Virus record (IMG/VR): IMGVR_UViG_3300032770_000002
Coordinates: 124,001-188,000 of that record
Reading direction: 5' to 3' (one strand)
DNA length: 64,000 nucleotides
The notes under the pieces are model-generated. The model made no database searches. It was given only the letters and a program-made list of their open reading frames with translations, and was not told where the DNA came from. Position numbers and translations under genes: made by a program. The first letter of the stretch is position 1. Every line of letters begins with the position of its first letter. Shown here piece by piece: positions 4,035-53,424 of this stretch.

Positions 4035-5112
4035 TGACGCGCTCAGCATCATCCATCACGGCCGCAACAGGGCCAAGTTGCTGGAACTGGTTTATCGCGG
4101 GCACGAGTGTGACCACGGGGACGGGCTGTTGCCACACGAGAAATTCACCCTGGCTGACAAGGCCGCCGCAGCAATCGCCCGCCTCACTCCTGACGATGAC
4201 ACAAAGCTCGACCGGCAGTCCGTTGCCAAATACATCGACCTAGAGAAGGTTGACTCGCCTGACTTCATCTACGGATACGAAGACGTCATTGACGCGGTCC
4301 TCAGCCACACCTCCAACAACCTCGAGCCTGAACTGAGGGACTGGCTCATCGACCGTGGCGTGACCGAGGAGCAGGTCCGCAGCTTTCGGTCGTTTAGCCA
4401 AGTGAGGAGCCGGCGACACCGGATTTACCTTGGCATCGAGGTTCACCCGGCGCTTCAGAAGTGGGTGGGCTGTTCAAGACCCAAGGGCATCATGATGAGC
4501 GCCTTTGGGTGCGATGGGGCGCTCTCTGGTGTGCACCTGCGGATGCTGTCCACCGTGCCGAAGATCAAGTTTGGCGCCTCTGTGCCACTGCTGCATGTCT
4601 CATCAAACGTCTGGTGTTGCCCGCGGCTTTACACTCACGCGCCGGATTTTGAGCCAGGCATGGACGTGTGGCTCGTTGAGGGGATCTTCGATGGGCTGGC
4701 CTTGGACCGGGTTGGAAAACACTACTTTTCGCCGTCAAGTGGCACGTGGTCATGTGAGCAGCTTTTCATCCTCGTCTCCCAGCTTCGGCGCTGCAAGCCA
4801 GGGCGGGTCATCTGCGCCCACGACAACGACCGTGTTGGGTTGAAGGAGAACCTCTTCCTCTGGTCGGTGTTGAGGCCTGAGTTTCAGACTGAGATCTTCG
4901 CTTACCCAAAGGGCGTCAAGGACATGTCGGAGCTCGTCTGCAAGCACCGCTCTGACCCGACGTCAGGTTCATTGGTCAACGCCGAAAAGGTCGCGGAACA
5001 GTATCTCGCCATGCCTTACAAGCCAGTCGTTCAATTTGACCACTATCTTGACTTTCGCAATTCGGCCTACAACAATGACCGCTATGCGTGGGCATATTTA
5101 AAGCATGGGTGA
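4021..5112 (+). CDS. Toprim-domain protein (DnaG/primase-like)
   Basis: VWLVEGIFDGLAL, ICAHDNDRVG and KGVKDMSEL Toprim motifs; ATG 4021 preferred over the track start 3967. Confidence 0.75.
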   Translation: MTIDDDALSIIHHGRNRAKLLELVYRGHECDHGDGLLPHEKFTLADKAAAAIARLTPDDDTKLDRQSVAKYIDLEKVDSPDFIYGYEDVIDAVLSHTSNNLEPELRDWLIDRGVTEEQVRSFRSFSQVRSRRHRIYLGIEVHPALQKWVGCSRPKGIMMSAFGCDGALSGVHLRMLSTVPKIKFGASVPLLHVSSNVWCCPRLYTHAPDFEPGMDVWLVEGIFDGLALDRVGKHYFSPSSGTWSCEQLFILVSQLRRCKPGRVICAHDNDRVGLKENLFLWSVLRPEFQTEIFAYPKGVKDMSELVCKHRSDPTSGSLVNAEKVAEQYLAMPYKPVVQFDHYLDFRNSAYNNDRYAWAYLKHG

Positions 5113-5782
5113 GTCACGCCAATTGATTGACGACCTTGAGCGGCGGCGTAAGCGCAATGTCACGGTGACCGAGATCAACCAGCTTATTGGTGGGTTCCAC
5201 TTCGACTTTCCGCGGTCGTCATCGCACGTCGACTACAAGCCGCAGCGTGAAGCGTGGCTGAATGTGGCCAGGCACCTCGACTGCACGCTCCTCGACCTGG
5301 CTGACGCCATCGCCAGTCCTAGCAAGACCCCTGAATGTGACCACTACTTGGTCGGCATTGAGGGCCTGTGGGAACTGACGCGCCACCCTGAGCTGTTCAA
5401 GCTGACTGACTATGACACGTCACGATTGACCGACCAGCTTGTCGTCTCTTACTTTTACGGCAACGACGACCGGCGTGAGGCTTTCCGCAAGTATGCGTCA
5501 CACAAGCCTGAGGACATGGCCTCGTCCATTGCGGAGTTTCTCAGCGGTGCTGGCGCTAAGGCCAAAGGGAATGTCGTCACATACGACCCGACTCGGTTTG
5601 TTGAGTTAGACTGGCGGATTGACAGCATCGATGAATTAACCGAGCCGCTCTTGAGCAGCGGTTGGAATGTCGAGATAAGGCCAAGCAAGACGACAAAGGC
5701 TTCGACGATGACTCCACTCATGGAACTTGTCGTGCACGGCCTTGACTTCCGCGGGGCGATGCACCGCATTCTAGGCCGCTAG
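5105..5782 (+). CDS. hypothetical protein with ESRQLIDD leader
   Basis: 225-aa ORF overlapping the Toprim gene stop. Confidence 0.75.
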   Translation: MGESRQLIDDLERRRKRNVTVTEINQLIGGFHFDFPRSSSHVDYKPQREAWLNVARHLDCTLLDLADAIASPSKTPECDHYLVGIEGLWELTRHPELFKLTDYDTSRLTDQLVVSYFYGNDDRREAFRKYASHKPEDMASSIAEFLSGAGAKAKGNVVTYDPTRFVELDWRIDSIDELTEPLLSSGWNVEIRPSKTTKASTMTPLMELVVHGLDFRGAMHRILGR

Positions 5783-5785
5783 TTT

Positions 5786-5817
5786 TTGTTTACAAACCTA
5801 CACTGTTGTGGCACATT
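5786..5817 (+). promoter_or_regulatory. putative early sigma70-type promoter
   Basis: TTGTTTACAAA, 17-bp spacer, TGG-CACATT; same motif at six other sites. Confidence 0.6.
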
Positions 5818-5823
5818 GCCACA

Positions 5824-5961
5824 ATGACTGCAATCATTCGACTGTGGGTGAGGTTGACGGACTGGTGGAGTGGGCGATGTGGCAACGACCCATGCCACAG
5901 TTACTTCCCGGCTCGCTTTGGGTGGCGATGTCGCAAGTGCCACAAGTTCACGTGGCTCTAA
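5824..5961 (+). CDS. 45-aa zinc-ribbon-like protein
   Basis: CGNDPC...CRKC; starts 6 nt after the promoter -10 box. Confidence 0.5.
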   Translation: MTAIIRLWVRLTDWWSGRCGNDPCHSYFPARFGWRCRKCHKFTWL

Positions 5962-7144: not shown

Positions 7145-7276
7145 GGTGAAAATGGCGGCCACGCAGGTCACTGAGACCGCCAGGGTGCAACTGCGATCCA
7201 CATGAGACGCCGGCCCGCGTGGCCACTGTGAAGAACTACGTGACGTATTTAATTCGTTGATAATTGAAACAAACCC

Positions 7277-7534
7277 ATGAAGTCACGAGATTTAATCGAT
7301 TCACAGTATGGCGGGAGGCCCGTTCCGCCGCATCAAAATCTCGACACTGACACCGAGCTTGACCTGGCGTCTAAGCAGGGTTTCACGGCGTGGGAATACG
7401 CCCAACGGATGAACCGCCACCACCCTCGCCTGCTTCAGGCTGTGACTGGCACCCCATACGAGCCGCTTTATCGCCGCCATTTCAACCTTCCTCAGCAAGA
7501 CAAGTGGTATGAAGGCCAAGTTAAGCCGACGTAA
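7277..7534 (+). CDS. hypothetical protein with KSRDLIDS leader
   Basis: 85-aa ORF after an A-rich leader. Confidence 0.65.
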   Translation: MKSRDLIDSQYGGRPVPPHQNLDTDTELDLASKQGFTAWEYAQRMNRHHPRLLQAVTGTPYEPLYRRHFNLPQQDKWYEGQVKPT

Positions 7535-14322: not shown

Positions 14323-14793
14323 TTAGGATGGTGTTCGTAAGTTGTCAATGAGTTTCCTCGCCTTGGACTCAGTCAGCGCGGCTTCAACCTGAATCCAAGC
14401 TAGGAACTTGGCGTCGAGCAGGATTTCATACCCAGGGACCTCTTCGTCCATGATTGCGTCGATGCCACCTTGAGCTTGGATTCCCTTGATGCTGTTGATG
14501 TCATTCGGTCGATATCGCTCTTTGTAAGGGAGGTGGCGCCAAATCTCATAGGCGATGTCCTCCATCCCATACGGGTGGTCCTTCAGGCTTGGGTTTAATA
14601 ATTGTCGAAGCGGCACCTCGATCTCCGGGCCATAGCGTGCAACGGCCTTCTCAACGATGGCTTGAATCTGAGGCTCGGCCACGCCAGGGTGGATTGCGCC
14701 GCCCTTGTAGACCACTCGACGAACTTCCAAAAAGACTCGGCCAGCTTGTTTGCAAGCTGTCCAAAGTTTTTCATCGTATTCGTCGATTCTCAT
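14323..14793 (-). CDS. modular-array protein (one helical 'RYG' module A)
   Basis: AVARYGPEI...LLDAKFLAWIQVEAALTES-KARKLIDNL. Confidence 0.75.
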   Translation of the reverse strand: MRIDEYDEKLWTACKQAGRVFLEVRRVVYKGGAIHPGVAEPQIQAIVEKAVARYGPEIEVPLRQLLNPSLKDHPYGMEDIAYEIWRHLPYKERYRPNDINSIKGIQAQGGIDAIMDEEVPGYEILLDAKFLAWIQVEAALTESKARKLIDNLRTPS

Positions 14794-16598
14794 GGTGATT
14801 CAAGCCTACGGCTTATCTTGATTCGTTGAAGTTCGATCTTGAACCGCTTAAGGGCCTCTTCCTCATCCTTCCCGACGAGGAGGAAGATGTGGTCGATCTT
14901 GTCTGGGTTTGCGGTAGTGGTGCGGACGCCATGCATGTCGAGGTCGACGATTCGGTCACCGGTCTTAAATTGGTCGTTGGTGAGTCGCATCACCATCTCA
15001 AATGTGTCTTGGTAGTGGGCGCTGCTGTAGTCAATGGCGTGTCGAAATGGCTCGATCGCGCTGATGACCTCATCCGTGGTCGCGTCAAATGGAATGACAA
15101 TAACTTCCACGGGCGTCTCAAGCTCAGTCGAATCTGGCCTTCCAGGGCGGTTGTAGTAGAGGCGTTGGAACCTTGGCCCGTAGTCGTCCCTAGGGTGCTG
15201 TCGGTGGTGAAACTGGGCCATCTCATCAACGACAGAACGCGCTGAGGACTCGCCTAGCTTGTGGCGCAATATCCGGCCTTCGGTCTTTACCAATGCGTCA
15301 TGGAAGGCCTCTTGAAACGCGGTGGTGGCCAACTGCGAGATGACATGCCAACTGACGTATCGCGACACATAGTTCACTATTCCAGCCTCGTGGTTGCACG
15401 TTATCCAGATGTCCTCGAGCACGCGAAGCAAGTCATCGTCGACTTCCTCCTTGAGAAAACGCTTAAACCAAGCCCACTCGCGCCGATCGTAATTTACAAC
15501 GGGCGCCATCATGCGGCCAACGACGTCAGCGTTGGATTCGCCAAGCAAGCTGCTGACTCGGCCTCGTTCAAGCATCTTGAGGGCTCGCTCAAGCTGGTCT
15601 TTGAACTCACCCGTGTCCATCTCGGTGTAGTCCTCCTCGCTGACATACTCTTGGATGTAGTCGAGCACGCCGCGCATGTTGCCGCAGTAGTTGAAGACGT
15701 CGGCCACGATGTCAATGTGCTCTTGTGTGGCGCCGGACTGTTCAAGGTTGTAAAGGAGCATCTTGAGCTTTGGCCGGCCAAAGCTGATGATCGGGAAGAG
15801 GACTTCGGCCAGGCCAACGATGTGGGCCAGTCGGCGCAACTTGGCTCGCTTTCTGGCCTGTTCCATCTCCTCGTCACCTTCGTTGAGGTGCGTCCTGACG
15901 ATGTCGCCTAACAATCGACGGTGCTCGTCCGGGTTGAGCAGGACCCAAAAACTTTGATTCCACCCGCCGCGCTGGTGGATGTTGTAAAGTGTGTCGCCTG
16001 GACGCATCTGCGTGGCGACAAACTGGCCGATTCGTTCGTTGTTGTTTGAGTCGCCGCAGTGCCGGTATGGGTCAAGCAGCCTGTAAAGGATGTTGTGGTC
16101 GCCCGTGTGGACGTCAATTGTCGGCGCTTCAGGCAGGATGACGTCGCCTTTGCGTATTGGGTCTTTGTTGGCGACATTGTAGCTTGGGTCAAGTTCGGAG
16201 TCATCGCCAGCTCTGGAGAGGTCACGCTGCATCCGATAGTATGGCATCTCCATTAGGCTGTTGACGACAGAACGCGCCTTGGATTCAAGTGCGTCTCTCA
16301 TCTTGGCTTTTTGAATCAACAGCCTCAAGTAGCTTAAAAACTCGTCCGACGAGAACGTGGCGTAAAGTGCTTTGTCATTGGCATCGCCATGTTTCATCAT
16401 GTCAAGCTGGTCCACGAGGATGGTCCAGCCTCCGGGCAAGAGAGAAGCCAGTTCATCGCTTATTTTATCGCCAAAGCGAGCTTTGACTTTGTCGATCATT
16501 TGACGAGTAACGGCATCTTCAGGATTTGACGTGAATGCCATTCTAAAATTAACAATCTCGTCAGCTACATCCACCAAGAGGATAGGCGTGGGTATCAC
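14790..16598 (-). CDS. modular-array polyprotein (modules A, B, A, B with ES-xARxVV junctions)
   Basis: 602 aa; ARFGDKI, WVLLNPDEHRRL, LLVGKDEEEALKR; junctions ALES-KARSVV, LLGES-NAD, KLGES-SARSVVDE. Confidence 0.8.
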   Translation of the reverse strand: MIPTPILLVDVADEIVNFRMAFTSNPEDAVTRQMIDKVKARFGDKISDELASLLPGGWTILVDQLDMMKHGDANDKALYATFSSDEFLSYLRLLIQKAKMRDALESKARSVVNSLMEMPYYRMQRDLSRAGDDSELDPSYNVANKDPIRKGDVILPEAPTIDVHTGDHNILYRLLDPYRHCGDSNNNERIGQFVATQMRPGDTLYNIHQRGGWNQSFWVLLNPDEHRRLLGDIVRTHLNEGDEEMEQARKRAKLRRLAHIVGLAEVLFPIISFGRPKLKMLLYNLEQSGATQEHIDIVADVFNYCGNMRGVLDYIQEYVSEEDYTEMDTGEFKDQLERALKMLERGRVSSLLGESNADVVGRMMAPVVNYDRREWAWFKRFLKEEVDDDLLRVLEDIWITCNHEAGIVNYVSRYVSWHVISQLATTAFQEAFHDALVKTEGRILRHKLGESSARSVVDEMAQFHHRQHPRDDYGPRFQRLYYNRPGRPDSTELETPVEVIVIPFDATTDEVISAIEPFRHAIDYSSAHYQDTFEMVMRLTNDQFKTGDRIVDLDMHGVRTTTANPDKIDHIFLLVGKDEEEALKRFKIELQRIKISRRLESP

Positions 16599-17230
16599 TT
16601 GAGCAGCCTCCTGAAGTCCTTGCCAACGGCCTCGATGGACATGCGCTTGAGCTCGTCATACTCTTCGGGGTTGGCCAGCACAAGCCAGCTATTCAATGAC
16701 TGTTTTGACGCCCTAACCATGACGACTTTGTCTTCTGGATTTTTCGACAGGACGAATGACACGATCTTACTGGCCTCTAATTGGCCAGGAATGAACCGCA
16801 GTGGCCCAAGGATTGGCTGAAGATAAACGTCCCACCCAACTCCAAGTCGCAGGTCTTCGATGTCCGGCAGCGTGCCAGTCATGTCGGCTTCGTAAAGCGA
16901 AACGGTGACAGCGACCCAGTTCTCGAACTCCTTTGACATGATCACCTGGTAGGCGTCATTGCTCAGGTTGCGGGCGATCTCGTCAGAAATTCGTTGAGTC
17001 GCAAAGGTCCGTTCAAGCATGTTCGTGTGGGACCAGTTGTCTTGAATCGCTAACAGTTCGTCGAGCGCGTTAGAGACCTCCTTGCCGTAGCGCCGCTCGA
17101 CTTGTTTAAGAAAAGCTGGATAATCTTTAGAGTCGTCTGGAAACTTGCGTGAGATCCATCGAACCGTGCGTGTGCCGCGGTTGACGTCACCCATGTCGAT
17201 GTTGTCAATCAGTTGGCGTGCGACACTCAC
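16595..17230 (-). CDS. modular-array protein (A+B)
   Basis: SVARQLID leader; RRYGKEV; WLVLANPEEYDELKR. Confidence 0.8.
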   Translation of the reverse strand: MSVARQLIDNIDMGDVNRGTRTVRWISRKFPDDSKDYPAFLKQVERRYGKEVSNALDELLAIQDNWSHTNMLERTFATQRISDEIARNLSNDAYQVIMSKEFENWVAVTVSLYEADMTGTLPDIEDLRLGVGWDVYLQPILGPLRFIPGQLEASKIVSFVLSKNPEDKVVMVRASKQSLNSWLVLANPEEYDELKRMSIEAVGKDFRRLLK

Positions 17231-18369
17231 TTTCCAAGCTCCTCATGCTGGGCCATTTCCAATTGAGAATCGATGAGTCGGCGTGCGCTAGACTCAGATA
17301 GCAGTGACATCGTCACCTTGGACCACGCAACAAACTCATTGCTTATGACCTTGTCGAGCACGTTTATGGTAAAGTTTCCATTGTCAAGATTTTGTTTAAT
17401 CCACTCGTCAACTGGAAGTCCTGGGTGTTTTAAGATGGCCTTGACAATAGTGGCCGCTTCGTCGCCATAACGCTGCTTGACGCGTTCAAGGTATGCACCT
17501 AAAATTCGCTCCCTTCTAGACTTGAGCCGGGCTTGAACCTCACCATACTGTGCGCCGGCCATTACGTGCGGGTCGTGCCTCGGCGTGTCCGTGGCCTGTT
17601 GATAGAGGGTGTTCAGGTCCCAGACCACGCTGTTGAGAACGTCAGTCCACTTAGACTTATTCTCTTGAAGGGTCGCCTCCATCTTCAACCACGACCGGAA
17701 TTTCGGGTCAAGGATCGCCTGGTAGACTTGTTTGATGACCGGGTCGTTTTGGCTATTGTAGACCTGCTTGCAGACCCACCTAGAGTCGGTTCCAGCCGAG
17801 TTGGTGACGAGCCACTCGGCCACCTCTTGCCCACATCGCTGTGACAAGCGTTCAAGGAAGCGGCTGTAGGTGTCGTAGTTGTCCACGTCACCGTGCTTAC
17901 CATATCGCGATAGCACGTCGTGCAGGTCATCGAGCACTGGCTTCCAGTCGTCCCACACCTTTCCCATGTCTATGTCGCCAAACAACCGGCGGTGCTCAGA
18001 CTCATGCAAAGCGGCCGTCACCTTGACCCAACTCTTGAATGCCGGGTTGAGGAGCTCCTCGACCATCTTTCGGGTCTCATACTGGTGATAGCCCTGGTGG
18101 TAAAAGATCTTGTCAATGACGTGTGAGATGACCGCGCCAGACGACTCAGCTCGCGTGCCTTCAACTCCCGGGGCCATGACTTCCTCGTGACCGACAAAGA
18201 CGTGCTGGTCCAGGTAGTCGACCGTCTCTTGGCTGAGGCCGCGTGAGAGAAGCAGGTCGAGGAAGTTGCCGTAAGACTCGTCGTCGTAGGACATCGAGTC
18301 GGCCAGCTTGATTAGCCCGCGTAATACGGGCCTCAATTCAGTCCACAGTTGGTCTAGTGTGTAGGCCAC
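17227..18369 (-). CDS. modular-array protein (three tandem module A copies)
   Basis: Three repeats ending LNPAFKSW..LHES, LDPKFRSW..LQEN, ISNEFVAW..LSES. Confidence 0.8.
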   Translation of the reverse strand: MAYTLDQLWTELRPVLRGLIKLADSMSYDDESYGNFLDLLLSRGLSQETVDYLDQHVFVGHEEVMAPGVEGTRAESSGAVISHVIDKIFYHQGYHQYETRKMVEELLNPAFKSWVKVTAALHESEHRRLFGDIDMGKVWDDWKPVLDDLHDVLSRYGKHGDVDNYDTYSRFLERLSQRCGQEVAEWLVTNSAGTDSRWVCKQVYNSQNDPVIKQVYQAILDPKFRSWLKMEATLQENKSKWTDVLNSVVWDLNTLYQQATDTPRHDPHVMAGAQYGEVQARLKSRRERILGAYLERVKQRYGDEAATIVKAILKHPGLPVDEWIKQNLDNGNFTINVLDKVISNEFVAWSKVTMSLLSESSARRLIDSQLEMAQHEELGK

Positions 18370-22206: not shown

Positions 22207-22982
22207 AGGACAACTTCAGGTGCCCAGACGACCTTTACGTCGACGTTGAGGGCGTGCTTGGTGTGCGCCCACAAAAATCGGCGCAAAACTTCGACCCACT
22301 CTCACAGGAGACACAAACTGGGTATAAAAATGTCCTCCACCGGGCGCACATTTCTTGCAAAAACCAATTGTGGTCAAGTGTGCGTAATGGTGGGCAGCCA
22401 ATTAGGTATCGCCTTGCGTGGAATTACTTGGACAACAATGAACCCGTGGCCTTTATTGATATGGTTGAGATTCGACGCATGAACTTTGTCCACAAAGACG
22501 GCACGCCTTATGACATCCGCCCACTTGAGGCCAAGTTCTTGCGGACGCAGATTGACAAGTTGCCAGAGAGTCGAGCTCAGCAGGTCATTGAGATGGCGTA
22601 TTATTCGCTCCACGATCACCCACCGAGTGAGCAGTGGGTCAAGGACAACAACGTGGACGTCGTCCTGACGAAACACGTCCCGATATGGGACATTGCGGCG
22701 ACGAACGTGCACCACCTGTTTCATGGCATGAAGTGGACTGACTCGTCACGCTACGATGCCACTGACAACCTGCTGGCGTTTCTCAACACGAAGGAGGGTG
22801 ACGAGACGTTCGTCCGAGTTCGAATCATTCACCCTGACACCCTCGCCCTTGTGAATCGAGCTGGATTATCGAGCGGGCTGACTGGCATCTACTACGTCTT
22901 GGCAAAGCCTGAACAGCTTGAAAAACTCAGGCGCGAGATGATCAAGACCCAAGGGATGAAGGTCAAGAAGGCCCTCAAGTGA
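22203..22982 (+). CDS. modular-array protein (C+B)
   Basis: HKDGTPYDIRPL and IYYVLAKPEQLEKLRR. Confidence 0.8.
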   Translation: MKDNFRCPDDLYVDVEGVLGVRPQKSAQNFDPLSQETQTGYKNVLHRAHISCKNQLWSSVRNGGQPIRYRLAWNYLDNNEPVAFIDMVEIRRMNFVHKDGTPYDIRPLEAKFLRTQIDKLPESRAQQVIEMAYYSLHDHPPSEQWVKDNNVDVVLTKHVPIWDIAATNVHHLFHGMKWTDSSRYDATDNLLAFLNTKEGDETFVRVRIIHPDTLALVNRAGLSSGLTGIYYVLAKPEQLEKLRREMIKTQGMKVKKALK

Positions 22983-23653
22983 ACGCGCGCCAGACAATTG
23001 ACGAGATGGCCCACATGATCTTGGGGCGGCGCAAGAAGCCAACTGTCACCGACATCAAGGTGGGTGTTGATGTTTATTCAACGCTTCCCGCGTTGAAGGC
23101 TTTCGCCGTGGCCGTGCTGTCAAATGGCCAGTTTAAACACTTTGAAGTTACAGAACCAACCGATGCCGATGATACAGCCATGGTCCACGCAGCTAGGGCC
23201 GTCAGCGGGGGTGATTCTTTCTATGCTACTTTTCCAATGACCCAGCTTGAGGTAAGGCTTCGCGAAAAGAACTGGGCAAAACTCCAGTCAATGCGTGAGG
23301 AAGTTGTGCGCCAGGCCAAGGCCTGGGTTTACGACAATGAGCGTGAAATCAAGTATGGAAAGCTCAAGCGCCCGCAGTCGATAAAGCTCGACTACGACGC
23401 TGCCCCGCTCGTCAAGGGATTTCGGTTCATTCGCTTCGCCAAGGGCTCACGCAAGGGGATGGACAGTGTCTTGGCTTTGACCCAAAGCGCCGCGCCAGGG
23501 GAGTCCGTGCTCAAGGTCGAAGGGAGTGACATGACCCACACGGGTCTGCGATACGTGTATTACGTCCTGCTCACCCCTGAGGAACGCCAAGAGCTTGAGC
23601 GTCGGCGCATCCAGGTTGAACGGGAGCGCATTGGAGGCATCCTCGGCCAATGA
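22979..23653 (+). CDS. modular-array protein (D+B)
   Basis: NARQTIDE leader; AVLSNGQFKHF...VVRQAKAWV; VYYVLLTPEERQELERR...RIGGILG. Confidence 0.8.
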   Translation: MNARQTIDEMAHMILGRRKKPTVTDIKVGVDVYSTLPALKAFAVAVLSNGQFKHFEVTEPTDADDTAMVHAARAVSGGDSFYATFPMTQLEVRLREKNWAKLQSMREEVVRQAKAWVYDNEREIKYGKLKRPQSIKLDYDAAPLVKGFRFIRFAKGSRKGMDSVLALTQSAAPGESVLKVEGSDMTHTGLRYVYYVLLTPEERQELERRRIQVERERIGGILGQ

Positions 23654-24426
23654 ACGCGAAGGACGTCATCGAGGCCAGGTTTAAACACCGGCCACACCCA
23701 GGCCTTTGCATCAAGGTGACGCTGAGCATTGGCAAGGCACCACCCAAGTTTAGTCAGCCATTTCACCTGATCGTTCCAGTTCCAGCCCGAGTTCCATTTG
23801 ACAGCGTTGAAGAGTGGTGGGATGGCACTGAATCGCCAGCGGGCATAGAGCTGTGGGACATGATGCAACAGCAGCTTCCAAAATTCTCAAAAAACTTGGA
23901 AAGATACGGCCTAGTAAGAAATTGGCGCTACGCCATCATGAGGAACGGGAAGAGGATCAAGTTGAAGGGCCGCTCACCGAACCTTCAACTAGAGGAGCCC
24001 TATGTCGTTGCTTATGTCCACAGGAACGGCAAGCCCTACGACATTCGCCCATTTATGCGTGACCGCGTCTCAGGCCTGCTCGGTGAGTCACGTCCACACC
24101 CTGGACTTTGTGTTCAAATCGACATTGACGTCTATCGCTATGATGCAACATCGACCGTCCATGAGCCAAAGGTAATGACGATAGTGGTGCCAGTTCCAGA
24201 CGGGGTTCCTTTCGACGACATTCAATACTGGCTTAGGCAGAAGGAAAGGCCTGGTTCATTTGTGACGTGGTGGCCATATATCGAAGCGCAACACCACATC
24301 GACAAAAACACGGTCAGCGCCATTGTTTACCCAGGTGGAATTGCCGGCTACGTTCACGCTGACGGAACACCTTACGACGTCCGCCCATTTTTCGGTGATC
24401 GCGTGAAAGGCATACTTGACAAATGA
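23650..24426 (+). CDS. modular-array protein (C+C)
   Basis: Two RPHPGLC...H(R/A)(N/D)G(K/T)PYD(I/V)RPF..DRV.G(L/I)L units. Confidence 0.85.
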   Translation: MNAKDVIEARFKHRPHPGLCIKVTLSIGKAPPKFSQPFHLIVPVPARVPFDSVEEWWDGTESPAGIELWDMMQQQLPKFSKNLERYGLVRNWRYAIMRNGKRIKLKGRSPNLQLEEPYVVAYVHRNGKPYDIRPFMRDRVSGLLGESRPHPGLCVQIDIDVYRYDATSTVHEPKVMTIVVPVPDGVPFDDIQYWLRQKERPGSFVTWWPYIEAQHHIDKNTVSAIVYPGGIAGYVHADGTPYDVRPFFGDRVKGILDK

Positions 24427-24854
24427 AGGCCAGACAACTCATTGACGCTAAGCTCAACGAGCCACACTACAACAGCCCTGAGGAAGTTCGGCTGGCCCGC
24501 GTGACGTTCAACGTCTCCATCGAGAATGTTGAGGGTGAAGTGACCCGCAAGATGGGGCCGTTTATGGTTGACGTTCACCTCGATCCTGGGGAACTTGAGG
24601 CCAAAGGGTTGACACTGGCCAGCAAGCGTTTCTGGCAAGGTAATGGGGAGTGGAGACTGTGGAAAGAGTTCAGGGGGCAGCATCAAAAGGATTATACTGT
24701 GATCGGTGCGTTGATCGCCGATCATTATCTCGTCGACGCGGACGTCGTTGACGTCAAGATCGTTGACTACTTCGGCAACCCGGTCGACCTGCAGAACGTC
24801 GCTCGTGGTTTCATCAAGGGGCAGCTTGACAAGCCAAGTGAAAACGAGGAGTAG
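24423..24854 (+). CDS. modular-array protein (divergent C)
   Basis: KARQLID leader; DYFGNPVDLQ...FIKGQLDK. Confidence 0.7.
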   Translation: MKARQLIDAKLNEPHYNSPEEVRLARVTFNVSIENVEGEVTRKMGPFMVDVHLDPGELEAKGLTLASKRFWQGNGEWRLWKEFRGQHQKDYTVIGALIADHYLVDADVVDVKIVDYFGNPVDLQNVARGFIKGQLDKPSENEE

Positions 24855-26277
24855 CCATCACATCGCTGAGGAGGACGTCCCACACCCTGGGCTGTGCGTC
24901 AAGCTCACCCTGGGCGTCGTCGTGAAGCGTCGCCTTGACTATGAGCTTGGTTATCGTGAGTGGGAAGTCTACGGGGAACAGGCCGCATCGCCAGTCATCG
25001 TGCCGATTCCAGATAATTGGCCGTGGCGAGCCGCCGATGAGTGGGTCTATGCCCTTATGGATCATGAGGTCGACCTGGTCGACATCGTCCAGAAACAGAG
25101 CCCGGAGACGTGGAAAAAGGTCGAGGAGTGGCGGTATGAACTGACTCCACGCTATGACGTCAAGGAGGAGTTTGAGGTTGTCGAGATTCTTGGGTGGTGC
25201 CACGCTGATGGCACGCCTTACGACATCCGCCCGCTTGAAGCTGGCCGAGTTCGAGACATTCTTGGCGAAGCTGAAGATGAGTGGGACCGCTGCCTTCAAG
25301 ACGCGCGCAAGCTCTACGTGGAAATAAAGAAGCTGTGGCATGAAAGTGGCTATTACCACAACAAACTTGGCGAAAAGGTTCTCAGTGACGTCGAGTTTCA
25401 CTACGGCCAGGACGTCGCCAACTGGTTGAGGTATTTTATGGGCGTCCACCCACGGCAGGTTGGGTGGACACTTCAGCGTTGGAGCCCTGAGATCATTGCC
25501 GACCACATGGACCCGGTCAATGGGCAGGAACACCCCGAAGCCTTGGCCACGCTTCGAACGCCTGAGTTCAGGCACTTTTTGAGTCGGGCCATCGCAAGGG
25601 CAAACGTCAGGTCAATGCTTGGTGGTGGCACGCTTGAGTCACTTGACGATTTTCGCCCACACCCTGACCTCCATGTCGTGGTTAAGTTACGCATCTATGG
25701 CCCGCCTTGGGCTCATGACGAGGCCACTGCTCCTGATAATCGTGGCTATAACTTGGAAGAGTGGGATGACGCCATCGTGACCGTTCCAGTTCCTGAGCAC
25801 TGTTCATTTGATGAGATTGAAAATTGGGTCTTTCAGCGCGATACGAGTGAAGGGTCGATTATGTGGTGGCACGAGTTTAAAGCCCAATCGCCTGAGGAGG
25901 CCCAGCGCATTGAAACCGAAAAAGGTTTACACTTAGGCGTGGCTGTGGTAGGGGTAATAGGGTATCAACATGGCGATGGGCGGCCATACGACATTCGCCC
26001 ATTCCTTAGGGATCGCGTCGGCAGATTGTTAAACACAGACGAAGATGTTATGTCAAATGCAAGAAAAGTCATCGATGAGTTCACGAGTGCGTCTGGCGTT
26101 CCTGGCCGTGACATGGGGCCGGCGCCGCTTGTCGCTCCACCGCCAGTGCGCCCACGCCCGACGACGCCAACGCGTCCGGCTCAGCCGACTAAACCTGGCG
26201 TGAGGCCATGGCACCCGACGCCTCGCCCTGGAGTAAACCCACGCCCCAAAGCCAGGTTTCGCAGGACCGGTGTCTAG
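24838..26277 (+). CDS. modular-array polyprotein (C+A+C plus Pro-rich tail)
   Basis: GTG 24838; PHPGLC, HADGTPYDIRPL, FHYGQDVANWL..TPEFRHF, HGDGRPYDIRPF, then MSNARKVIDE and a Pro-rich tail. Confidence 0.8.
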   Translation: MKTRSSHHIAEEDVPHPGLCVKLTLGVVVKRRLDYELGYREWEVYGEQAASPVIVPIPDNWPWRAADEWVYALMDHEVDLVDIVQKQSPETWKKVEEWRYELTPRYDVKEEFEVVEILGWCHADGTPYDIRPLEAGRVRDILGEAEDEWDRCLQDARKLYVEIKKLWHESGYYHNKLGEKVLSDVEFHYGQDVANWLRYFMGVHPRQVGWTLQRWSPEIIADHMDPVNGQEHPEALATLRTPEFRHFLSRAIARANVRSMLGGGTLESLDDFRPHPDLHVVVKLRIYGPPWAHDEATAPDNRGYNLEEWDDAIVTVPVPEHCSFDEIENWVFQRDTSEGSIMWWHEFKAQSPEEAQRIETEKGLHLGVAVVGVIGYQHGDGRPYDIRPFLRDRVGRLLNTDEDVMSNARKVIDEFTSASGVPGRDMGPAPLVAPPPVRPRPTTPTRPAQPTKPGVRPWHPTPRPGVNPRPKARFRRTGV

Positions 26278-47045: not shown

Positions 47046-47047
47046 AC

Positions 47048-49590: not shown

Positions 49591-49606
49591 AAATTTTTCC
49601 ACTTTT

Positions 49607-49637: not shown

Positions 49638-49682
49638 AGGGATGTAAGTTAAAACTTAACACGACCAAAGAAAGATAATCAT

Positions 49683-51278: not shown

Positions 51279-51901
51279 AATGGACGCATTGCAAATATGA
51301 CGGTGCAAGGCTGAGGAAAGATGCGGACAATACTGTCCAACGAAAAACTGTCAGTGGCACCATGGTCTTCCGACGTCAGAAGATGATGGGCCTCCACGTC
51401 ATCGAAAATTCCATCGTGTTCCTATGGGTGATGTCAACCGCTCGACGAGTCATTGACCAAGTTGCTGAGTCTGACGACCTCAGTCAGGCCATTCGTCAGC
51501 GTGAACACTTGATCCTGTGCATGCGCGACCCAGCATTTGTCGCGCGGAGTGAAAATCCTCGGAAAGCCATTACTGGAGACATTCTCAAGATCACACGGAG
51601 AATGAAGCACCCGCCTGGTTCAACAGTCCACATCATGCAATTGACCAGGGACGCCGAGGACATTGATCGGCCGTGGGACCGCGGCACGCGAACGGTTCGT
51701 GCAACTCAGTTTCAAGGAATTCCACCGCAGGACAGTAAGACGTGGGGTCGTCCAACTTATGGTCATTCCGTTGATTATTGGAACTATGAACCACACGAGT
51801 GGGGCACCCAGGAAGTCGAACTGGTCGGGCACGGAAAACGTCATGAGCTGGGACGGCTATGGACGCCACGGCCTGGAAATCCTGGCTACGATTTGGGCTA
51901 G
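51275..51901 (+). CDS. hypothetical protein with internal MSTARRVIDQ leader (possible start 51431)
   Basis: 208-aa ORF; in-frame ATG at 51431. Confidence 0.6.
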   Translation: MKWTHCKYDGARLRKDADNTVQRKTVSGTMVFRRQKMMGLHVIENSIVFLWVMSTARRVIDQVAESDDLSQAIRQREHLILCMRDPAFVARSENPRKAITGDILKITRRMKHPPGSTVHIMQLTRDAEDIDRPWDRGTRTVRATQFQGIPPQDSKTWGRPTYGHSVDYWNYEPHEWGTQEVELVGHGKRHELGRLWTPRPGNPGYDLG

Positions 51902-51908
51902 TTAGCAT

Positions 51909-52328
51909 ATGCCGAGTTTAGCTCGAGTCGTCATCAACATTTTCGAGGCATGTTACTGCCAAGCCTCTGGCGAGGAGGTCGTCAACTACCTGCTTGACAT
52001 TGGCACGTCACATGGCGGATTTTTGCCAAAAACCTTGCGTGACATCGCCGGCCGTGACTTTGAGTTGACGTCAGTTCCCATTGACGACCTGCTCAGGTCC
52101 GATGACAAGTTCGCTGAATTTTATCGCAAGACCAAGCGGCCAGACCCAAACAAACCTTACCAGCCGCGTGATTTAAGGCAGACCGACAAGGGTGAGCCGG
52201 TGGAGGCTGAGGACTTGATTGACTCGCCAGTCGTTGTCATTGATGGGAAGCTCCGTGACGGGTGGCACAGAACGGCCGGAAAATTGGACAGGGGTGACAA
52301 GAAGGTCTTGGCATACGTAGCAAAATGA
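51909..52328 (+). CDS. ParB/sulfiredoxin-like domain protein
   Basis: SPVVVIDGKLRDGWHR...KKVLAYV; preceded by CTAGTTAG at 51898-51905. Confidence 0.55.
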   Translation: MPSLARVVINIFEACYCQASGEEVVNYLLDIGTSHGGFLPKTLRDIAGRDFELTSVPIDDLLRSDDKFAEFYRKTKRPDPNKPYQPRDLRQTDKGEPVEAEDLIDSPVVVIDGKLRDGWHRTAGKLDRGDKKVLAYVAK

Positions 52329-52921
52329 AAGCACGCGACATCATCGATTCGGTCACACCAGAGCGGGCGTGTGTTCAGTGCGAAATTGAACACGGCATTT
52401 ACGACAAGTCAGACCCTAACAAGTCACATGGCTCGTGCCGGCGTCACCTTGAACAGTGGGCAAGGGAACAAGGATTGACTGACGCCCAAGTTGATGAGAT
52501 CATGCGTGAGACCAAGTCTTACCCACCGGACTTGGGGCCAGTTCGTGAAGCCTTAGAAAGGGCTTGTTCGCAGTGCGAAAAGGACCACGGGATTCGAAGC
52601 CACGGTAAAAGCCACGGGCTCTGCAAGCGGCATACCATTGAGTGGGCCAGGGAAGGCGGAGTCTCCGAACCTGAGATTGAGGCCATCGTTCGTGAAGTTG
52701 ACGCTGGTAGTGGCTTTCCAGAGGACCTTGGGCCAGTCAAGAAGGATGAGGACCTTGAAAAACAGTGCCTCTACTGTGGGCGGCTATTTGACCCGCAGTC
52801 AAACCAGTGGGTCGACGCAAAACCTAGGGACCCGAATAACGTCAGTCACGGCTACTGCCCTGATTGTTTGGAGAAGTCCAAGCAACAGGTTCGGTCTATG
52901 TTTGGAACGGAGCGCCGTTGA
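52325..52921 (+). CDS. protein with three CxxC...SHGxC zinc-binding repeats
   Basis: CVQC..SHGSCRRH, CSQC..SHGLCKRH, CLYC..SHGYCPDC. Confidence 0.8.
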   Translation: MKARDIIDSVTPERACVQCEIEHGIYDKSDPNKSHGSCRRHLEQWAREQGLTDAQVDEIMRETKSYPPDLGPVREALERACSQCEKDHGIRSHGKSHGLCKRHTIEWAREGGVSEPEIEAIVREVDAGSGFPEDLGPVKKDEDLEKQCLYCGRLFDPQSNQWVDAKPRDPNNVSHGYCPDCLEKSKQQVRSMFGTERR

Positions 52922-53424
52922 ACGCCCGCAATCTTATCGACCGGTTGGTTGAAACGTCTGACTTGACGTTTGTCCCGATGGACGCTGACGAGATCCGGCA
53001 GGTTCAGTCTATTGCCGCTGGACAGCTGGCCAACGTGGACAATCTTTACTTCATTAACCAGGACATTACTGATTATCACAGCCTTAACATCGACATCCCG
53101 CAGGAGTATTTGCGCAAGAAGGTTGGACACGGCCTTGAATCGGGTGACGTTCACGGCGAGTTTTACGGATTCGGTCGAATGGCCTTCACACCTTCATCTC
53201 TTTTACGGTCTGAAATTGGAAGAGTTCCAGTTGTCTCTGGCTTGCACGTCATGGTGTTAAAGAGCAGCCAAGGGTGGGTTATTGGAACCACTCGCGGAGG
53301 GTCATACGGTGGCATAACTTTTTACAAGGACCACCCGATGCATGACCTCAACGCGGCCATCCAGAAGTTCATTGCCACGCTGGAAGTCATTGCAAATGGA
53401 CAAAATTCCCGGTTTGACAGCTGA
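52918..53424 (+). CDS. hypothetical protein with NARNLID leader
   Basis: TTG 52918 overlapping the upstream stop. Confidence 0.65.
   Translation: MNARNLIDRLVETSDLTFVPMDADEIRQVQSIAAGQLANVDNLYFINQDITDYHSLNIDIPQEYLRKKVGHGLESGDVHGEFYGFGRMAFTPSSLLRSEIGRVPVVSGLHVMVLKSSQGWVIGTTRGGSYGGITFYKDHPMHDLNAAIQKFIATLEVIANGQNSRFDS

What the first reader, a model, noticed from the sequence alone, without database searches (positions are those of the whole stretch)
5105..52945. A shared 'xARx(L/I/V)ID' leader and L-x-E|S junction on about 20 unrelated proteins: candidate capsid-targeting and maturation code
Seen: N-terminal copies at 5105 (ESRQLIDD), 7277 (KSRDLIDS), 17230 (VARQLIDN), 22979 (NARQTIDE), 23650 (NAKDVIEA), 24423 (KARQLIDA), 26050 (NARKVIDE), 27230 (TAREIIDE), 28449 (NARRLVDS), 30606 (GAKALIDS), 31241 (ALMIIDA), 32090 (TARDLIE), 51431 (TARRVIDQ), 51909 (LARVVINI), 52325 (KARDIIDS) and 52918 (NARNLIDR). 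The same helix recurs internally or at C-termini right after an ...E-S site (LTES-KARKLID, ALES-KARSVV, LGES-SARSVVDE, LSES-SARRLID, HES-SSKSVID, IGES-AARLAID). Established: T4 internal proteins share a short N-terminal capsid-targeting sequence, and the T4 gp21 protease cleaves after Glu in (L/I)-x-E. Inference: this phage has its own targeting tag for many different cargo domains (ParB-like, zinc-binding, unknown), and multi-module genes are polyproteins cut into units inside the prohead and ejected with the DNA.
Basis: partly seen in the sequence, partly recalled or inferred. Interest (0 to 1): 0.85.

Follow-up and report, generated by a model that had tools for sequence, protein, structure and literature searches.

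The report
Shared leader tag on phage proteins
About two dozen otherwise unannotatable genes of an uncultivated 230-kb T4-type phage carry the same short helix, usually at the very start of the protein; with a T4-type head protease encoded elsewhere on the contig, this most likely marks proteins that are loaded into the capsid and trimmed there, a much enlarged version of the T4 internal-protein leader.

Summary
All 16 listed N-terminal copies are at the stated coordinates. The core x-A-R-x-(L/V)-I-D occurs 24 times in the window's proteins against 1.9 expected. Codons vary, so selection acts on the amino acids. I found further copies: four C-terminal and several internal. Every clear internal or C-terminal copy directly follows x-E-S.

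The window is part of a 230,253-bp IMG/VR contig. Walking along it found T4-type head genes: a gp20-family portal, a gp23-family capsid protein, and directly upstream of that a gp21-family prohead protease (Peptidase_S77) fused to a scaffold-like tail.

- The tail holds LGES, LSES twice and LKES: 4 L-x-E-S against 0.37 expected.
- L/I-x-E is enriched about threefold in tag segments and depleted in the mature bodies of tagged proteins, but not in other proteins.
- In relatives, an internal module occurs as a separate gene that starts with the tag.

It remains unproven.

Corrections:
- The cargos are not all unrelated; several belong to paralog and module families.
- "ParB-like" has no support.
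- L-x-E-S is not enriched genome-wide.

This is a new variant of a known kind.

The parts
2527..2571 (+). N-terminal tag VKSRSLIDRIAMLE|A (GTG start; the JGI gene call starts later, at an ATG)
   Evidence: in-frame stop 6 codons upstream
5105..5143 (+). N-terminal tag MGESRQLIDDLE; keeps a 'GES' before the helix
   Evidence: in-frame stop 2 codons upstream
7277..7306 (+). N-terminal tag MKSRDLIDSQ, with no Glu downstream
17192..17230 (-). N-terminal tag VSVARQLIDNIDM of the 211-aa gene 16595-17230
22979..23011 (+). N-terminal tag VNARQTIDE|MA (GTG overlapping the previous stop); cargo is a module-B family protein
23650..23682 (+). N-terminal tag MNAKDVIE|ARF; cargo is two module-A repeats
24079..24090 (+). 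L-G-E-S junction between the two module-A repeats, with no tag after it (LLGES|RPHPGLC)
24423..24461 (+). N-terminal tag MKARQLIDAKLNE|P
26050..26082 (+). Tag MSNARKVIDE|F, in frame inside the 509-aa ORF 24748-26277. Either a start for a 75-aa Pro-rich protein or the last module of a multi-module protein.
27230..27262 (+). N-terminal tag MTAREIIDE|VA; cargo is module-A repeats (404 aa)
28449..28490 (+). N-terminal tag MSENARRLVDSVFE|M of a conserved 423-aa all-alpha protein
   Evidence: tag and its Glu conserved in 41-62%-identical homologues; helix 3-13, pLDDT <50, detached from the body
30606..30650 (+). N-terminal tag MTFGAKALIDSLLYE|MPRH; the start agrees with the public gene call
31241..31276 (+). 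Weak N-terminal tag MSALMIIDAVYE|E
32090..32149 (+). Weak N-terminal tag; ...FTARDLIEVGDPE|M sits 9 residues after a GTG
51431..51469 (+). N-terminal tag MSTARRVIDQVAE|S (the gene caller used an upstream ATG)
51909..51947 (+). N-terminal tag MPSLARVVINIFE|A
52325..52363 (+). N-terminal tag MKARDIIDSVTPE; cargo has three CxxC...HG...C repeats
52918..52953 (+). N-terminal tag LNARNLIDRLVE|T (TTG overlapping the previous stop)
16245..16292 (-). Internal junction plus tag ALES|KARSVVNSLME|MPYY in the 602-aa multi-module ORF 14790-16598
   Evidence: Relatives: P0045 keeps FGES|RARQVINEMPYY; P0047 starts with MSAGQTIDRLLLEMPRH
15507..15548 (-). Internal junction LLGES followed by a degenerate tag NADVVGRMM. 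Relatives P0045 and P0046 end at this point.
15219..15257 (-). Internal junction plus tag LGES|SARSVVDE|MAQF
16479..16514 (-). Weak tag AVTRQMIDKVKA near the N-terminus of the 602-aa ORF
   Evidence: the public gene call starts at the Met inside it
14326..14376 (-). C-terminal junction plus tag LTES|KARKLIDNLRTPS-stop
17230..17301 (-). C-terminal junction plus tag LSES|SARRLIDSQLEMAQHEELGK-stop of the three-module 380-aa ORF; the next gene starts with its own tag
22560..22595 (+).
27156..27209 (+). C-terminal junction plus tag QHES|SSKSVIDDVFRRYR-stop
32038..32100 (+). C-terminal junction plus tag IGES|AARLAIDNLFLQRDRT-stop

Best explanation
The window is contig positions 124,001-188,000 of a 230-kb, T4-type, contractile-tailed huge phage known only from a metagenome.

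About 17 genes in the window, and at least 30 in the 209 kb I could read, begin with a 10-15-residue amphipathic helix: 1-4 residues, then A-R-x-(L/V)-I-D-x-hydrophobic-x-E, often E-M.

Most likely mechanism. This helix works like the T4 capsid-targeting sequence. It docks the newly made protein onto the prohead scaffolding core, which here is probably the long C-terminal tail fused to the gp21-family protease. [quoted passage not shown] The protease cuts after Glu in hydrophobic-x-E, often before Ser, which frees the cargo from its anchor. The freed cargo stays in the head and leaves with the DNA.

A Glu site usually lies between tag and cargo:
- after most N-terminal tags (21 of 30);
- before C-terminal tags;
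- on both sides of most internal tags.
Multi-module ORFs would therefore be cut into units.

Shown:
- the motif, its position and its enrichment;
- selection at the amino-acid level;
- the T4-type head genes on the same contig;
- enrichment of L-x-E-S in the protease's tail;
- depletion of L/I-x-E in the bodies of tagged proteins;
- interchange between internal modules and separate tagged genes in relatives.

Inferred:
- docking to the core;
- cleavage at these sites;
- presence in virions and ejection;
- an anti-defence role for the cargo.
For: 1. Motif statistics and N-terminal placement. Codons vary between copies.

2. T4-type head genes on the same contig:
- Portal_T4, 643 aa;
- gp13-like neck protein;
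- tail sheath;
- Gp23-family capsid protein, 84.7 bits against a cut-off of 24.4;
- directly upstream of it, Peptidase_S77, 59.6 bits against a cut-off of 27.
The protease matches gp21 genes in 2331 phage records and keeps the invariant His and Ser-Ser-Arg-Gly.

3. T4 gp21 cuts after L/I-x-E. T4 internal proteins carry 10-19-residue N-terminal targeting propeptides that gp21 removes (PMC9026906, PMC9958956, PMC12373910). The related SPN3US protease prefers Ser at P1' (PMC10052503).

4. The protease's C-terminal tail has 4 L-x-E-S against 0.37 expected, with 0 of 1000 shuffles reaching 4. Its orthologues in relatives carry 2-10 hydrophobic-x-E-S sites each. In T4-like phage Aeh1, L/I-x-E is likewise dense in gp22, gp21 and gp68 (3.2-5.3 per 100 aa) and sparse in gp23, gp24 and gp20 (0.3-0.8).

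5. L/I-x-E counts:
- tag segments: 18 against 5.6 expected;
- bodies of 29 N-tagged proteins: 37 against 51.9 +/- 6.4 (0.6% of shuffles are as low);
- the other 267 proteins: 508 against 462.

6. 21 of 30 N-terminal tags are followed by hydrophobic-x-E, against 37% in a matched background. All clear C-terminal and internal tags are preceded by x-E-S; chance regex hits in the ribonucleotide reductase, the sheath and similar proteins are not.

7. Relatives of the 602-aa ORF: P0047 begins with the tag, followed by module 2; P0045 keeps FGES|RARQVINEM; P0045 and P0046 end at the LLGES boundary.

8. The tag of the 423-aa protein is conserved in position across homologues, and its Glu is kept in at least 90% of them. 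AlphaFold2 puts it on a detached, low-confidence helix. Relatives carry variant tags (A-E-R-I/L-V...L-L-E), sometimes followed by Ala/Pro linkers.

9. Tags are absent from recognisable enzymes and from portal, sheath, baseplate and tape-measure proteins. They sit on proteins with no Pfam or PHROG family. One exception is a DMP19-like DNA-mimic domain.

10. One tagged gene lies 2 kb upstream of the protease gene (L033:5001-5543).
Against: - There are no proteomic, structural or genetic data. The phage is uncultivated.
- L-x-E-S and L/I-x-E are not enriched across the window as a whole. Enrichment of L-x-E-S in tagged proteins is modest: 8 against 3.35, with 23 of 1000 shuffles reaching 8.
- Nine of 30 N-terminal tags lack a downstream hydrophobic-x-E.
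- After cleavage at L-x-E|S, an internal module would still carry its tag, so internal tags are not needed for targeting.
- At least 30 tagged proteins, some of 400 aa, are far more than T4 packages.
- The conserved 423-aa tagged protein lies between DNA polymerase and ligase genes in a relative.
- The cluster 51431-53424 is downstream of a sigma-70-like, early-looking promoter. No T4 late promoter TATAAATA was found.
- The depletion test uses simple residue shuffles and one gene set.
Confidence: 0.58

Rival explanations
1. The helices are docking or oligomerisation elements for an assembly other than the capsid. For example, a C-terminal helix of one protein could pair with the N-terminal helix of the next, as docking domains do in polyketide synthases, or the tagged proteins could co-assemble in the cytoplasm. 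In that case x-E-S is only a conserved linker or helix cap, or is cut by another protease.
For: - In three of four cases, a gene that ends with a tag is followed directly by a gene that starts with one (17301/17230, 27209/27230, 32100/32090).
- Tags occur at N-termini, at C-termini and internally.
- The 423-aa tagged protein sits among replication genes in a relative.
- A PhageMetallopep gene and AAA genes exist on the contig.
Against: - It does not explain why the same L-x-E-S tetrapeptides pile up in the gp21-type protease's scaffold-like tail.
- It does not explain why L/I-x-E is depleted only in tagged bodies.
- The tandem C-terminal and N-terminal tags are equally well explained by fission of multi-module genes.
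Confidence: 0.15
2. The shared helix is only the best-conserved remnant of common ancestry in a large, fast-evolving paralogous gene family. Internal copies are scars of gene fusion and have no signalling role.
For: - Several tagged proteins share modules.
- Module B (ending ...YYVL.P.E..EL.R...) recurs in at least eight genes.
- The cargo proteins have almost no detectable homologues.
Against: - The tag sits on clearly different bodies: an all-alpha 423-aa protein, the module-A repeats, Cys/His repeats, a DMP19-like domain and a nucleotidyltransferase-like protein.
- It is kept while the bodies diverge beyond recognition, and it also occurs at C-termini.
- A remnant would not be the most conserved segment, and it would not be flanked by Glu sites on the cargo side.
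Confidence: 0.1
3. The leader directs new proteins to a chaperonin for folding, as reported for the N-terminus of T4 gp23. Removal of the leader is secondary.
For: - The contig encodes a Cpn10-like protein next to the portal region.
- The capsid protein's propeptide contains LLE|NARRKFGRLDE|V, with the same length and N-A-R-R...E frame as the tag of 28449.
- T4 precedent is cited in PMC10052503 (its reference 29).
Against: - Many tagged proteins are only 60-140 aa and would hardly need a chaperonin.
- C-terminal tags cannot act during translation.
- The idea does not explain the depletion of cleavage sites in the bodies.
Confidence: 0.07
4. The tag sorts proteins to another phage-built compartment, for instance one organised by the phage tubulin, rather than to the capsid.
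For: A TubZ/PhuZ-like tubulin is encoded at 58191-59393.
Against: - The head genes are T4-type, not phiKZ-type, and no shell protein of any compartment was recognised in 209 kb.
- Replication and nucleotide enzymes, the expected residents of a nucleus-like compartment, lack the tag.
Confidence: 0.05

Closest known systems
T4 capsid-targeting sequence (CTS) on internal proteins IPI-III and Alt, removed by the gp21 prohead protease
   Same: - A short N-terminal leader shared by proteins with no other similarity. T4 propeptides are 10-19 residues; here they are about 10-15.
- The leader ends in a hydrophobic-x-Glu site.
- The phage has gp20-, gp21- and gp23-family head genes.
- T4 Alt and gp21 also lose C-terminal pieces.
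- Related T-even phages carry variable sets of leader-bearing ip genes (PMC9026906, PMC9958956, PMC12373910).
   Different: - Scale: at least 30 tagged genes in 209 kb, against 3-10 in T-even phages.
- The tag also occurs at C-termini and between modules of multi-module ORFs.
- Ser follows the Glu at the junctions.
- The protease is fused to a 420-residue scaffold-like tail instead of having a separate gp22.
- The tagged genes are scattered in several operons.
- Sequence similarity to the T4 leader was not tested. No experimental evidence exists here.
Inner-body and ejection-protein paralog families of phiKZ, 201phi2-1 and SPN3US, processed by gp175/gp245
   Same: - A giant phage with large paralog families of head-internal proteins of unknown function; SPN3US family B has 20 members.
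- Cleavage after Glu, with Ser favoured at P1' in SPN3US.
- Multiple sites within propeptides (PMC5694885, PMC10052503).
   Different: - Those proteases use S/A/G-x-E; here P3 is mostly L, I, V or F, as in T4.
- No shared short leader is described for those families.
- No Pfam family typical of them was found on the tagged proteins.
- This phage has T4-type, not phiKZ-type, head genes.
Cargo-loading peptides of encapsulins and encapsulation peptides of bacterial microcompartments (recalled from memory, not tested against sequences)
   Same: Short amphipathic helices at the N- or C-terminus, or between domains, joined to diverse cargo by flexible linkers, that load cargo into a protein shell.
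   Different: No encapsulin or microcompartment shell gene was seen in 209 kb of Pfam-annotated contig. The shell here would be a virus capsid, and the tag appears to be removable by a protease.

Membership tests
T4-type CTS / internal-protein system | The phage encodes the T4-type prohead machinery (gp20 portal, gp21 protease, gp23 capsid protein) | tested here: met
   Portal_T4. Gp23 at 84.7 bits and Peptidase_S77 at 59.6 bits, both above Pfam cut-offs and adjacent to each other. The genes lie on the same contig but outside the window (contig about 15.5-18.9 kb and 61-63 kb).
T4-type CTS / internal-protein system | A short N-terminal leader shared by proteins that otherwise lack similarity | tested here: met
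   17 N-terminal copies in the window and 30 in 209 kb. Many cargos show no mutual BLASTP similarity, though some are paralogues.
T4-type CTS / internal-protein system | The leader ends at a protease site (L/I-x-E in T4) | tested here: met
   21 of 30 tags are followed by hydrophobic-x-E, against 37% in a matched background. L/I-x-E in tag segments is 18 against 5.6 expected. Nine tags are exceptions.
T4-type CTS / internal-protein system | The leader is necessary and sufficient for packaging into the prohead core | not testable with these tools
   Needs fusion-protein packaging experiments.
T4-type CTS / internal-protein system | The proteins are present in virions, processed, and ejected with the DNA | not testable with these tools
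   Needs virion proteomics or metaproteomics. The only indirect sign is depletion of L/I-x-E in tagged bodies.
T4-type CTS / internal-protein system | Sequence similarity of the leader to the T4 CTS | not tested
   The T4 internal-protein sequences were neither typed nor fetched. Only length and the position of the cleavage residue were compared, from PMC9026906.
gp21 prohead protease (Peptidase_S77) | Profile match above the curated threshold | tested here: met
   PF03420, E 3.9e-16, 59.6 bits against a cut-off of 27, residues 48-189 of L033:7619-9451. tblastn hits gp21 genes in 2331 phage records.
gp21 prohead protease (Peptidase_S77) | Conserved catalytic His and Ser | tested here: met
   Invariant H98 and S153-S154-R-G in the alignment with Aeh1 gp21 and two relatives. 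An N-terminal L-x-E (L21, E23) is also invariant. Which residues are catalytic is taken from memory of the T4 structure.
gp21 prohead protease (Peptidase_S77) | Gene order protease - scaffold - capsid protein | tested here: met
   The 611-aa protease-plus-tail ORF ends 36 nt before the Gp23-family ORF. Aeh1 has the order 68-21-22-23.
gp21 prohead protease (Peptidase_S77) | Cleaves after Glu in L/I-x-E | not testable with these tools
   Indirect only: L-x-E-S 4 against 0.37 expected in its own tail, and 2-10 such sites in orthologues.
phiKZ/SPN3US inner-body protein families | Cleavage motif S/A/G-x-E and membership in the described paralog families | tested here: not met
   P3 at the junctions is L, I, F or V in most cases. 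No Pfam family was found on the tagged proteins.
Encapsulin / microcompartment cargo peptides | A cognate shell gene (encapsulin, BMC-H or BMC-P) in the genome | tested here: not met
   No such Pfam family among gene calls and scans covering contig 7.9-216.6 kb.

The most novel reading that the evidence does not exclude
The phage uses one removable helix, placed at either end of a protein or between modules, as a general capsid-loading code. If so, about 10-15% of its genes, including arrays cut from multi-module precursors, are delivered into the host with the DNA. The helix may copy the last segment of the capsid protein's own propeptide (LLE|NARRKFGRLDE|V), so that cargo competes for the same site on the scaffold. 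Variant tags in related huge phages would then let the injected protein set of uncultivated phages be read directly from sequence.
Probability: 0.3. Interest if true: 0.75.

Novelty: new variant of a known kind. Interest (0 to 1): 0.6.

Why it matters
If the tag is a capsid-loading signal, it gives a sequence-only way to list the proteins that an uncultivated huge phage injects into its host. Those proteins are the most likely source of new anti-defence functions; one tagged protein already looks like a DNA mimic.

It would also extend the T4 capsid-targeting principle in three ways: to C-terminal tags, to internal tags, and to protease-cut multi-module precursors. A second, unrelated tag would be useful for packaging foreign proteins into phage heads.

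If the tag proves to be something else, the motif is still a clade-wide sorting or docking signal of unknown purpose on dozens of genes.

Tried and rejected
- Nucleotide-level repeat or regulatory element: rejected, because codons differ between copies.
- Close relatives among sequenced phages: none. Megablast of 20 kb and tblastn of the tubulin found nothing. tblastn of the 423-aa protein found only two weak hits in unannotated 630-640-kb phage records.
- Function of the cargo proteins: Pfam and PHROGs gave nothing for about 20 tagged proteins. "ParB-like" for 51909-52325 found no match even at E up to 5.
- The 423-aa tagged protein as capsid or portal protein: rejected. AlphaFold2 gives an all-alpha fold (pTM 0.79) with no informative match in PDB or BFVD, and PDB sequence searches were empty.
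- The 349-aa ORF 12994-14043 as capsid protein: rejected. Its sequence shows SxDGxxW repeats of a propeller type.
- Large ORFs outside the window (746 aa and two of 702 aa) as head genes: no PHROG or PDB signal.
- T4 late promoter TATAAATA as a link between tagged operons and head genes: absent from the window and from the head-gene locus. The recurrent intergenic motif is instead a sigma-70-like promoter, mostly before helicase and other non-tagged genes.
- Census of the tag across IMG/VR with the exact pattern for M-K-A-R-x-hydrophobic-I-D: 55 hits. Only the home contig has two, and the other loci have no second tag, so those hits look like chance and the pattern was too narrow.
- Homologues of the tagged 212-aa protein 30606-31241: only itself.
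- Microcompartment or encapsulin reading: no shell genes.
- Nucleus-like compartment reading: the head genes are T4-type, and replication enzymes are untagged.
- Not covered: contig 1-7.9 kb and 216.6-230.3 kb were not read. The second structure prediction was not used, because no deep alignment exists for a multi-module protein.

Full report

A six-frame scan with [ASTG][RK]x[LIVMT][IV][DEN] gave 34 hits in ORFs of at least 70 aa, most within 0-20 residues of the ORF start.

In a greedy set of 84 ORF proteins (20,945 aa):
- The stricter pattern occurs 24 times, against 1.9 +/- 1.4 in residue shuffles; 0 of 2000 shuffles reach 24.
- A[RK]x[LIV][IV]D occurs 12 times, against 0.29.

The codons for Ala, Arg, Leu and Ile differ from copy to copy. 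The conserved object is therefore a peptide, not a DNA element.

Seven copies have an in-frame stop 2-6 codons upstream. Several start codons overlap the stop of the preceding gene, as in ATGA, GTGA or TTGA. These helices are at the extreme N-terminus.

The column profile is A (17 of 23), R (19), x, L/V/I (21), I (19), D (18). It is followed by a hydrophobic position and then often by E or E-M.

**2.

Four proteins end with the helix:
- 14326-14376 minus strand;
- 17230-17301 minus strand;
- 27156-27209;
- 32038-32100.

In each case the helix comes 0-1 residue after x-E-S: LTES, LSES, QHES and IGES.

The 602-aa ORF 14790-16598 (minus strand) holds ALES|KARSVVNSLMEM, LGES|SARSVVDEM and a degenerate LLGES|NADVVGRMM. 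ORF 22203-22982 holds LPES|RAQQVIEM between two module types.

Chance regex hits inside the ribonucleotide reductase, the sheath, the tape-measure protein and similar proteins have no E-S in front.

**3. What is overstated.**

The cargos are not all unrelated. BLASTP groups 23650, 24748 and 27230, which share a repeated module of about 120 aa that starts RPHPGLC and ends DGTPYD.RP...LLGE. It also groups 22979 with 30606 (E 5e-12) and, weakly, 14326, 16598 and 17230-18369.

A second module, ending ...YYVL.P.E..EL.R..., recurs in at least eight genes.

Over the window as a whole, L-x-E-S is not enriched (10 against 6.0) and L/I-x-E is at background (156 against 152).

None of the roughly 20 tagged proteins has a Pfam or PHROG family. 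"ParB-like" has no support even at E up to 5.

**4. Where the window comes from.**

The 423-aa tagged protein located the window on IMGVR_UViG_3300032770_000002, a contig of 230,253 bp; window position 1 is contig position 124,001.

The window holds no recognisable structural gene. It has:
- a class II ribonucleotide reductase, a TubZ/PhuZ-like tubulin and a Toprim protein;
- thymidylate kinase, a PurZ-like adenylosuccinate synthetase and QueC;
- two giant proteins: one of 1789 aa with a laminin-G-like and weak PKD-like domains, and a separate 1131-aa melibiase-like one.

I walked the contig in steps of about 10 kb. From 216 kb down to 7.9 kb this found:
- a gp13-like neck protein;
- a Portal_T4 protein of 643 aa, a gp25-like baseplate protein and a Cpn10-like protein;
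- a baseplate hub;
- an 887-aa sheath;
- a weak tape-measure-like match (PhageMin_Tail, E 0.0099, below the Pfam cut-off) in a 777-aa ORF;
- at contig 15.5-18.9 kb, a 611-aa protein whose residues 48-189 are Peptidase_S77, the T4 gp21 family (59.6 bits, cut-off 27), followed after 36 nt by a 483-aa Gp23-family major capsid protein (84.7 bits, cut-off 24.4).

The protease part matches annotated gp21 genes in 2331 phage genomes at 25-36% identity. Aligned with Aeh1 gp21 and two relatives, it keeps an invariant His, an invariant V-S-S-R-G and an N-terminal L-x-E.

The gene order matches the 68-21-22-23 order of the T4-like phage Aeh1. The difference is that here the scaffold-like region is fused to the protease.

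The phage is therefore a distant T4-type myovirus, and a gp21-type protease is present.

**5. Does the junction look like that protease's site?**

T4 gp21 cuts after Glu in L/I-x-E. [quoted passage not shown] The 10-19-residue propeptides of the internal proteins are the capsid-targeting sequences (PMC9026906, PMC9958956). The related SPN3US protease cuts after A-x-E and favours Ser at P1' (PMC10052503).

In this phage, the 420-residue tail behind the protease domain contains LGES, LSES, LSES and LKES, together with many L-x-E-A sites; further hydrophobic-x-E-S sites (ITES in the protease domain, VRES in the tail) also occur in the 611-aa protein. In the full 611-aa protease protein that is 4 L-x-E-S against 0.37 expected and 6 hydrophobic-x-E-S against 0.89; no shuffle of 1000 reaches either value. 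The rate is 6.5 per 1000 aa, against 0.43 in untagged proteins.

Orthologous protease-scaffold proteins in eight related contigs carry 2-10 such sites each, typically K/A-L-x-E-S.

As a yardstick, Aeh1 has 5.3, 4.3 and 3.2 L/I-x-E per 100 aa in gp22, gp21 and gp68, but 0.7, 0.3 and 0.8 in gp23, gp24 and gp20. The present phage has 3.1-3.2 in the protease protein and 1.0 in the capsid protein.

The small ORF just upstream of the protease has FSEM near its start and ends with LTES-DPPA.

The capsid protein has two conserved L-x-E sites in the 92 residues that precede its Pfam domain (LLE at 71-73 and LDE at 82-84). The second aligns with the Aeh1 gp23 segment RIEE|A.

**6. Two further tests of the removable-tag idea.**

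First, placement of Glu sites. Of 30 N-terminal tags in 209 kb, 21 are followed within about 12 residues by hydrophobic-x-E. The rate is 37% at comparable [LIVMT][IV][DEN] triplets elsewhere and 20% at random positions. C-terminal tags have the site in front. Internal tags have it on both sides in most cases.

Second, if the cargo bodies must survive inside a head full of an L/I-x-E protease, they should avoid that motif. They do:
- bodies of 29 N-tagged proteins: 37 L/I-x-E against 51.9 +/- 6.4 expected from composition (0.6% of shuffles are as low);
- the other 267 proteins: 508 against 462;
- the 18-residue tag segments: 18 against 5.6.

The effect is modest and rests on simple shuffles, but it is specific to the tagged set.

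**7. Comparative evidence.**

The 423-aa tagged protein has 40 homologues at 41-62% identity, plus three weak hits at about 25%, on contigs of up to 251 kb. The N-terminal helix is kept in place, with consensus x-K-A-E-x-I/L-V-x-x-I/L-L-E-A/M, and the Glu is present in at least 90% of the sequences.

AlphaFold2 (pTM 0.79) models residues 3-13 as a helix with pLDDT below 50, separated from an all-alpha body.

Loci from more distant relatives contain further gene starts of the same kind, for example M-x-x-A-E-x-I-V-D-A-L/M-L and V-N-A-R-L-I-V-N-R-L-L-E. Several are followed by Ala/Pro-rich linkers.

A full HMMER search with the 602-aa ORF found only four relatives, and they are informative:
- P0047 starts with M-S-A-G-Q-T-I-D-R-L-L-L-E-M-P-R-H and continues with the query's second module. 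It also has VGES|RLVIDGM near its end.
- P0045 keeps the internal FGES|RARQVINEMPYY and stops at LLGDS.
- P0046 keeps SLSE|ARCVIDDAL.

Modules therefore move between "separate gene with an N-terminal tag" and "internal unit behind x-E-S". This is what a set of units released by a protease would look like.

**8. Extent.**

Outside the window, the tag heads runs of small ORFs with no known family at contig 71.5-72.9 kb, 99.3-103.7 kb and 106.9-111.7 kb. Single genes carry it at 12.9, 31.2, 32.5, 190.8, about 196.5 and 203.7 kb.

One of these, L004:4292-5449, has a DMP19-like DNA-mimic domain (29 bits, cut-off 25).

Enzymes, the portal, the sheath, baseplate proteins and the tape-measure-like ORF are untagged.

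**9. Interpretation.**

The best reading is a T4-style capsid-targeting leader with release by the gp21-type protease, expanded to dozens of cargos and to C-terminal and internal positions. I put this at about 0.58.

The concept is established for T-even phages. [quoted passage not shown] Giant phages such as SPN3US carry up to 20-member paralog families of head proteins (PMC5694885).

I therefore rate this a new variant of a known kind.

**10. What argues against it, and the rivals.**

Nothing shows packaging or cleavage directly.
- Nine N-terminal tags lack the downstream Glu.
- Internal tags are not needed for targeting.
- The number and size of the cargos is large.
- The 423-aa protein sits between polymerase and ligase genes in a relative.
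- The cluster 51431-53424 lies behind a sigma-70-like promoter, TTGTTTACAAA-N17-TATAxT, which otherwise precedes helicase-type genes.
- No T4 late promoter exists in the window or in the head-gene locus.

The rivals are:
- docking helices for another assembly (0.15);
- a remnant of paralogy (0.10);
- a chaperonin-targeting leader, prompted by the Cpn10 gene and by the capsid propeptide segment NARRKFGRLDE, which has the frame of the 28449 tag (0.07);
- sorting to another compartment (0.05).

None of the rivals explains the L-x-E-S load of the protease tail together with the depletion of the motif in tagged bodies only.

**11. Limits.**

Contig positions 1-7.9 kb and 216.6-230.3 kb were not read. 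Gene starts at GTG or TTG are my inference; public gene calls sometimes choose a later ATG. The exact-pattern scan of IMG/VR was too narrow to map the distribution of the tag.

Noticed in passing
window 53387-54379 (-), 6401-7201 (-): The adenylosuccinate-synthetase-like gene matches the PHROG family named '2-aminooxy adenylosuccinate synthetase' (PurZ-like, E 1.6e-41). A QueC-like gene is also present. Together with three thymidylate-synthase genes elsewhere on the contig, this hints at modified bases in the phage DNA.
   Followed up: no
window 58191-59393 (+): A tubulin/TubZ-like GTPase (Tubulin, E 3.7e-9, above the Pfam cut-off; TubZ-like C domain, E 2.8e-5, just below it) in a phage whose head genes are T4-type, not phiKZ-type. 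tblastn found no match among 50,697 sequenced phages.
   Followed up: partly
window about 49600-49682 (upstream of 49683); also at least 11 other intergenic sites on the contig: A recurrent motif TTGTTTACAAA, about 17 bases, then TATAxT. It looks like a sigma-70-type promoter (-35 TTTACA, -10 TATAAT-like), sits mostly before helicase and other non-structural genes, and is often found in divergent pairs.
   Followed up: partly
window 24423-24854 and 24748-26277 (+): Two ORFs overlap by 107 nt in different frames. The second has no convincing start before its first RPHPGLC module. This could be a programmed frameshift, an indel in the assembly, or an unusual start.
   Followed up: no
L033:9488-10936 (contig 17,422-18,870), residues 68-85: The capsid protein's propeptide contains LLE|NARRKFGRLDE|V, an 11-residue piece between two L-x-E sites with the same N-A-R-R...E frame as the tag of gene 28449. 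The L-E-N-x-R and L-D-E parts are conserved in relatives down to 28% identity.
   Followed up: partly
L033:7619-9451 (contig 15,553-17,385): The gp21-family protease is fused to a scaffold-like tail of about 420 residues that ends in a Gln/Pro-rich stretch, instead of having a separate gp22 gene. Relatives share this architecture (551-676 aa).
   Followed up: partly
window 33595-38964 and 39449-42844 (+): Two giant genes directly follow the main tagged operon: one of 1789 aa with a laminin-G-like domain and weak PKD-like matches, and one of 1131 aa with a signal peptide and a melibiase-like domain. They may be fibres or adhesins, or secreted enzymes.
   Followed up: no
window 7509-8468 (+), 12625-12981 (-), 18394-18999 (-): Twin-arginine-like signal peptides (RRNFIK..., RRSFFK...) and a lipoprotein-like signal on phage-encoded proteins. 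The 349-aa ORF 12994-14043 has SxDGxxW propeller-type repeats.
   Followed up: no
L031:13729-15468 (-) (contig about 32.7-34.4 kb): A 580-aa protein with an LGES site at 114-117, a SWIM-type CxC...CxH zinc-finger-like motif, a long Pro-rich region and C-terminal REFGGS repeats. It lies near the tape-measure-like ORF.
   Followed up: no
L004:4292-5449 (contig 190,795-191,952): A tagged 386-aa protein (MRQAKATIDQLFE...) with a DMP19-like DNA-mimic domain. It is the only tagged protein with a Pfam match above the cut-off.
   Followed up: partly
window 598-1134 (+): An HNH homing-endonuclease-like gene (PHROG 2255, E 6.6e-25). Two neighbouring small genes both start with MTRNPH..., which suggests a local duplication.
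   Followed up: no
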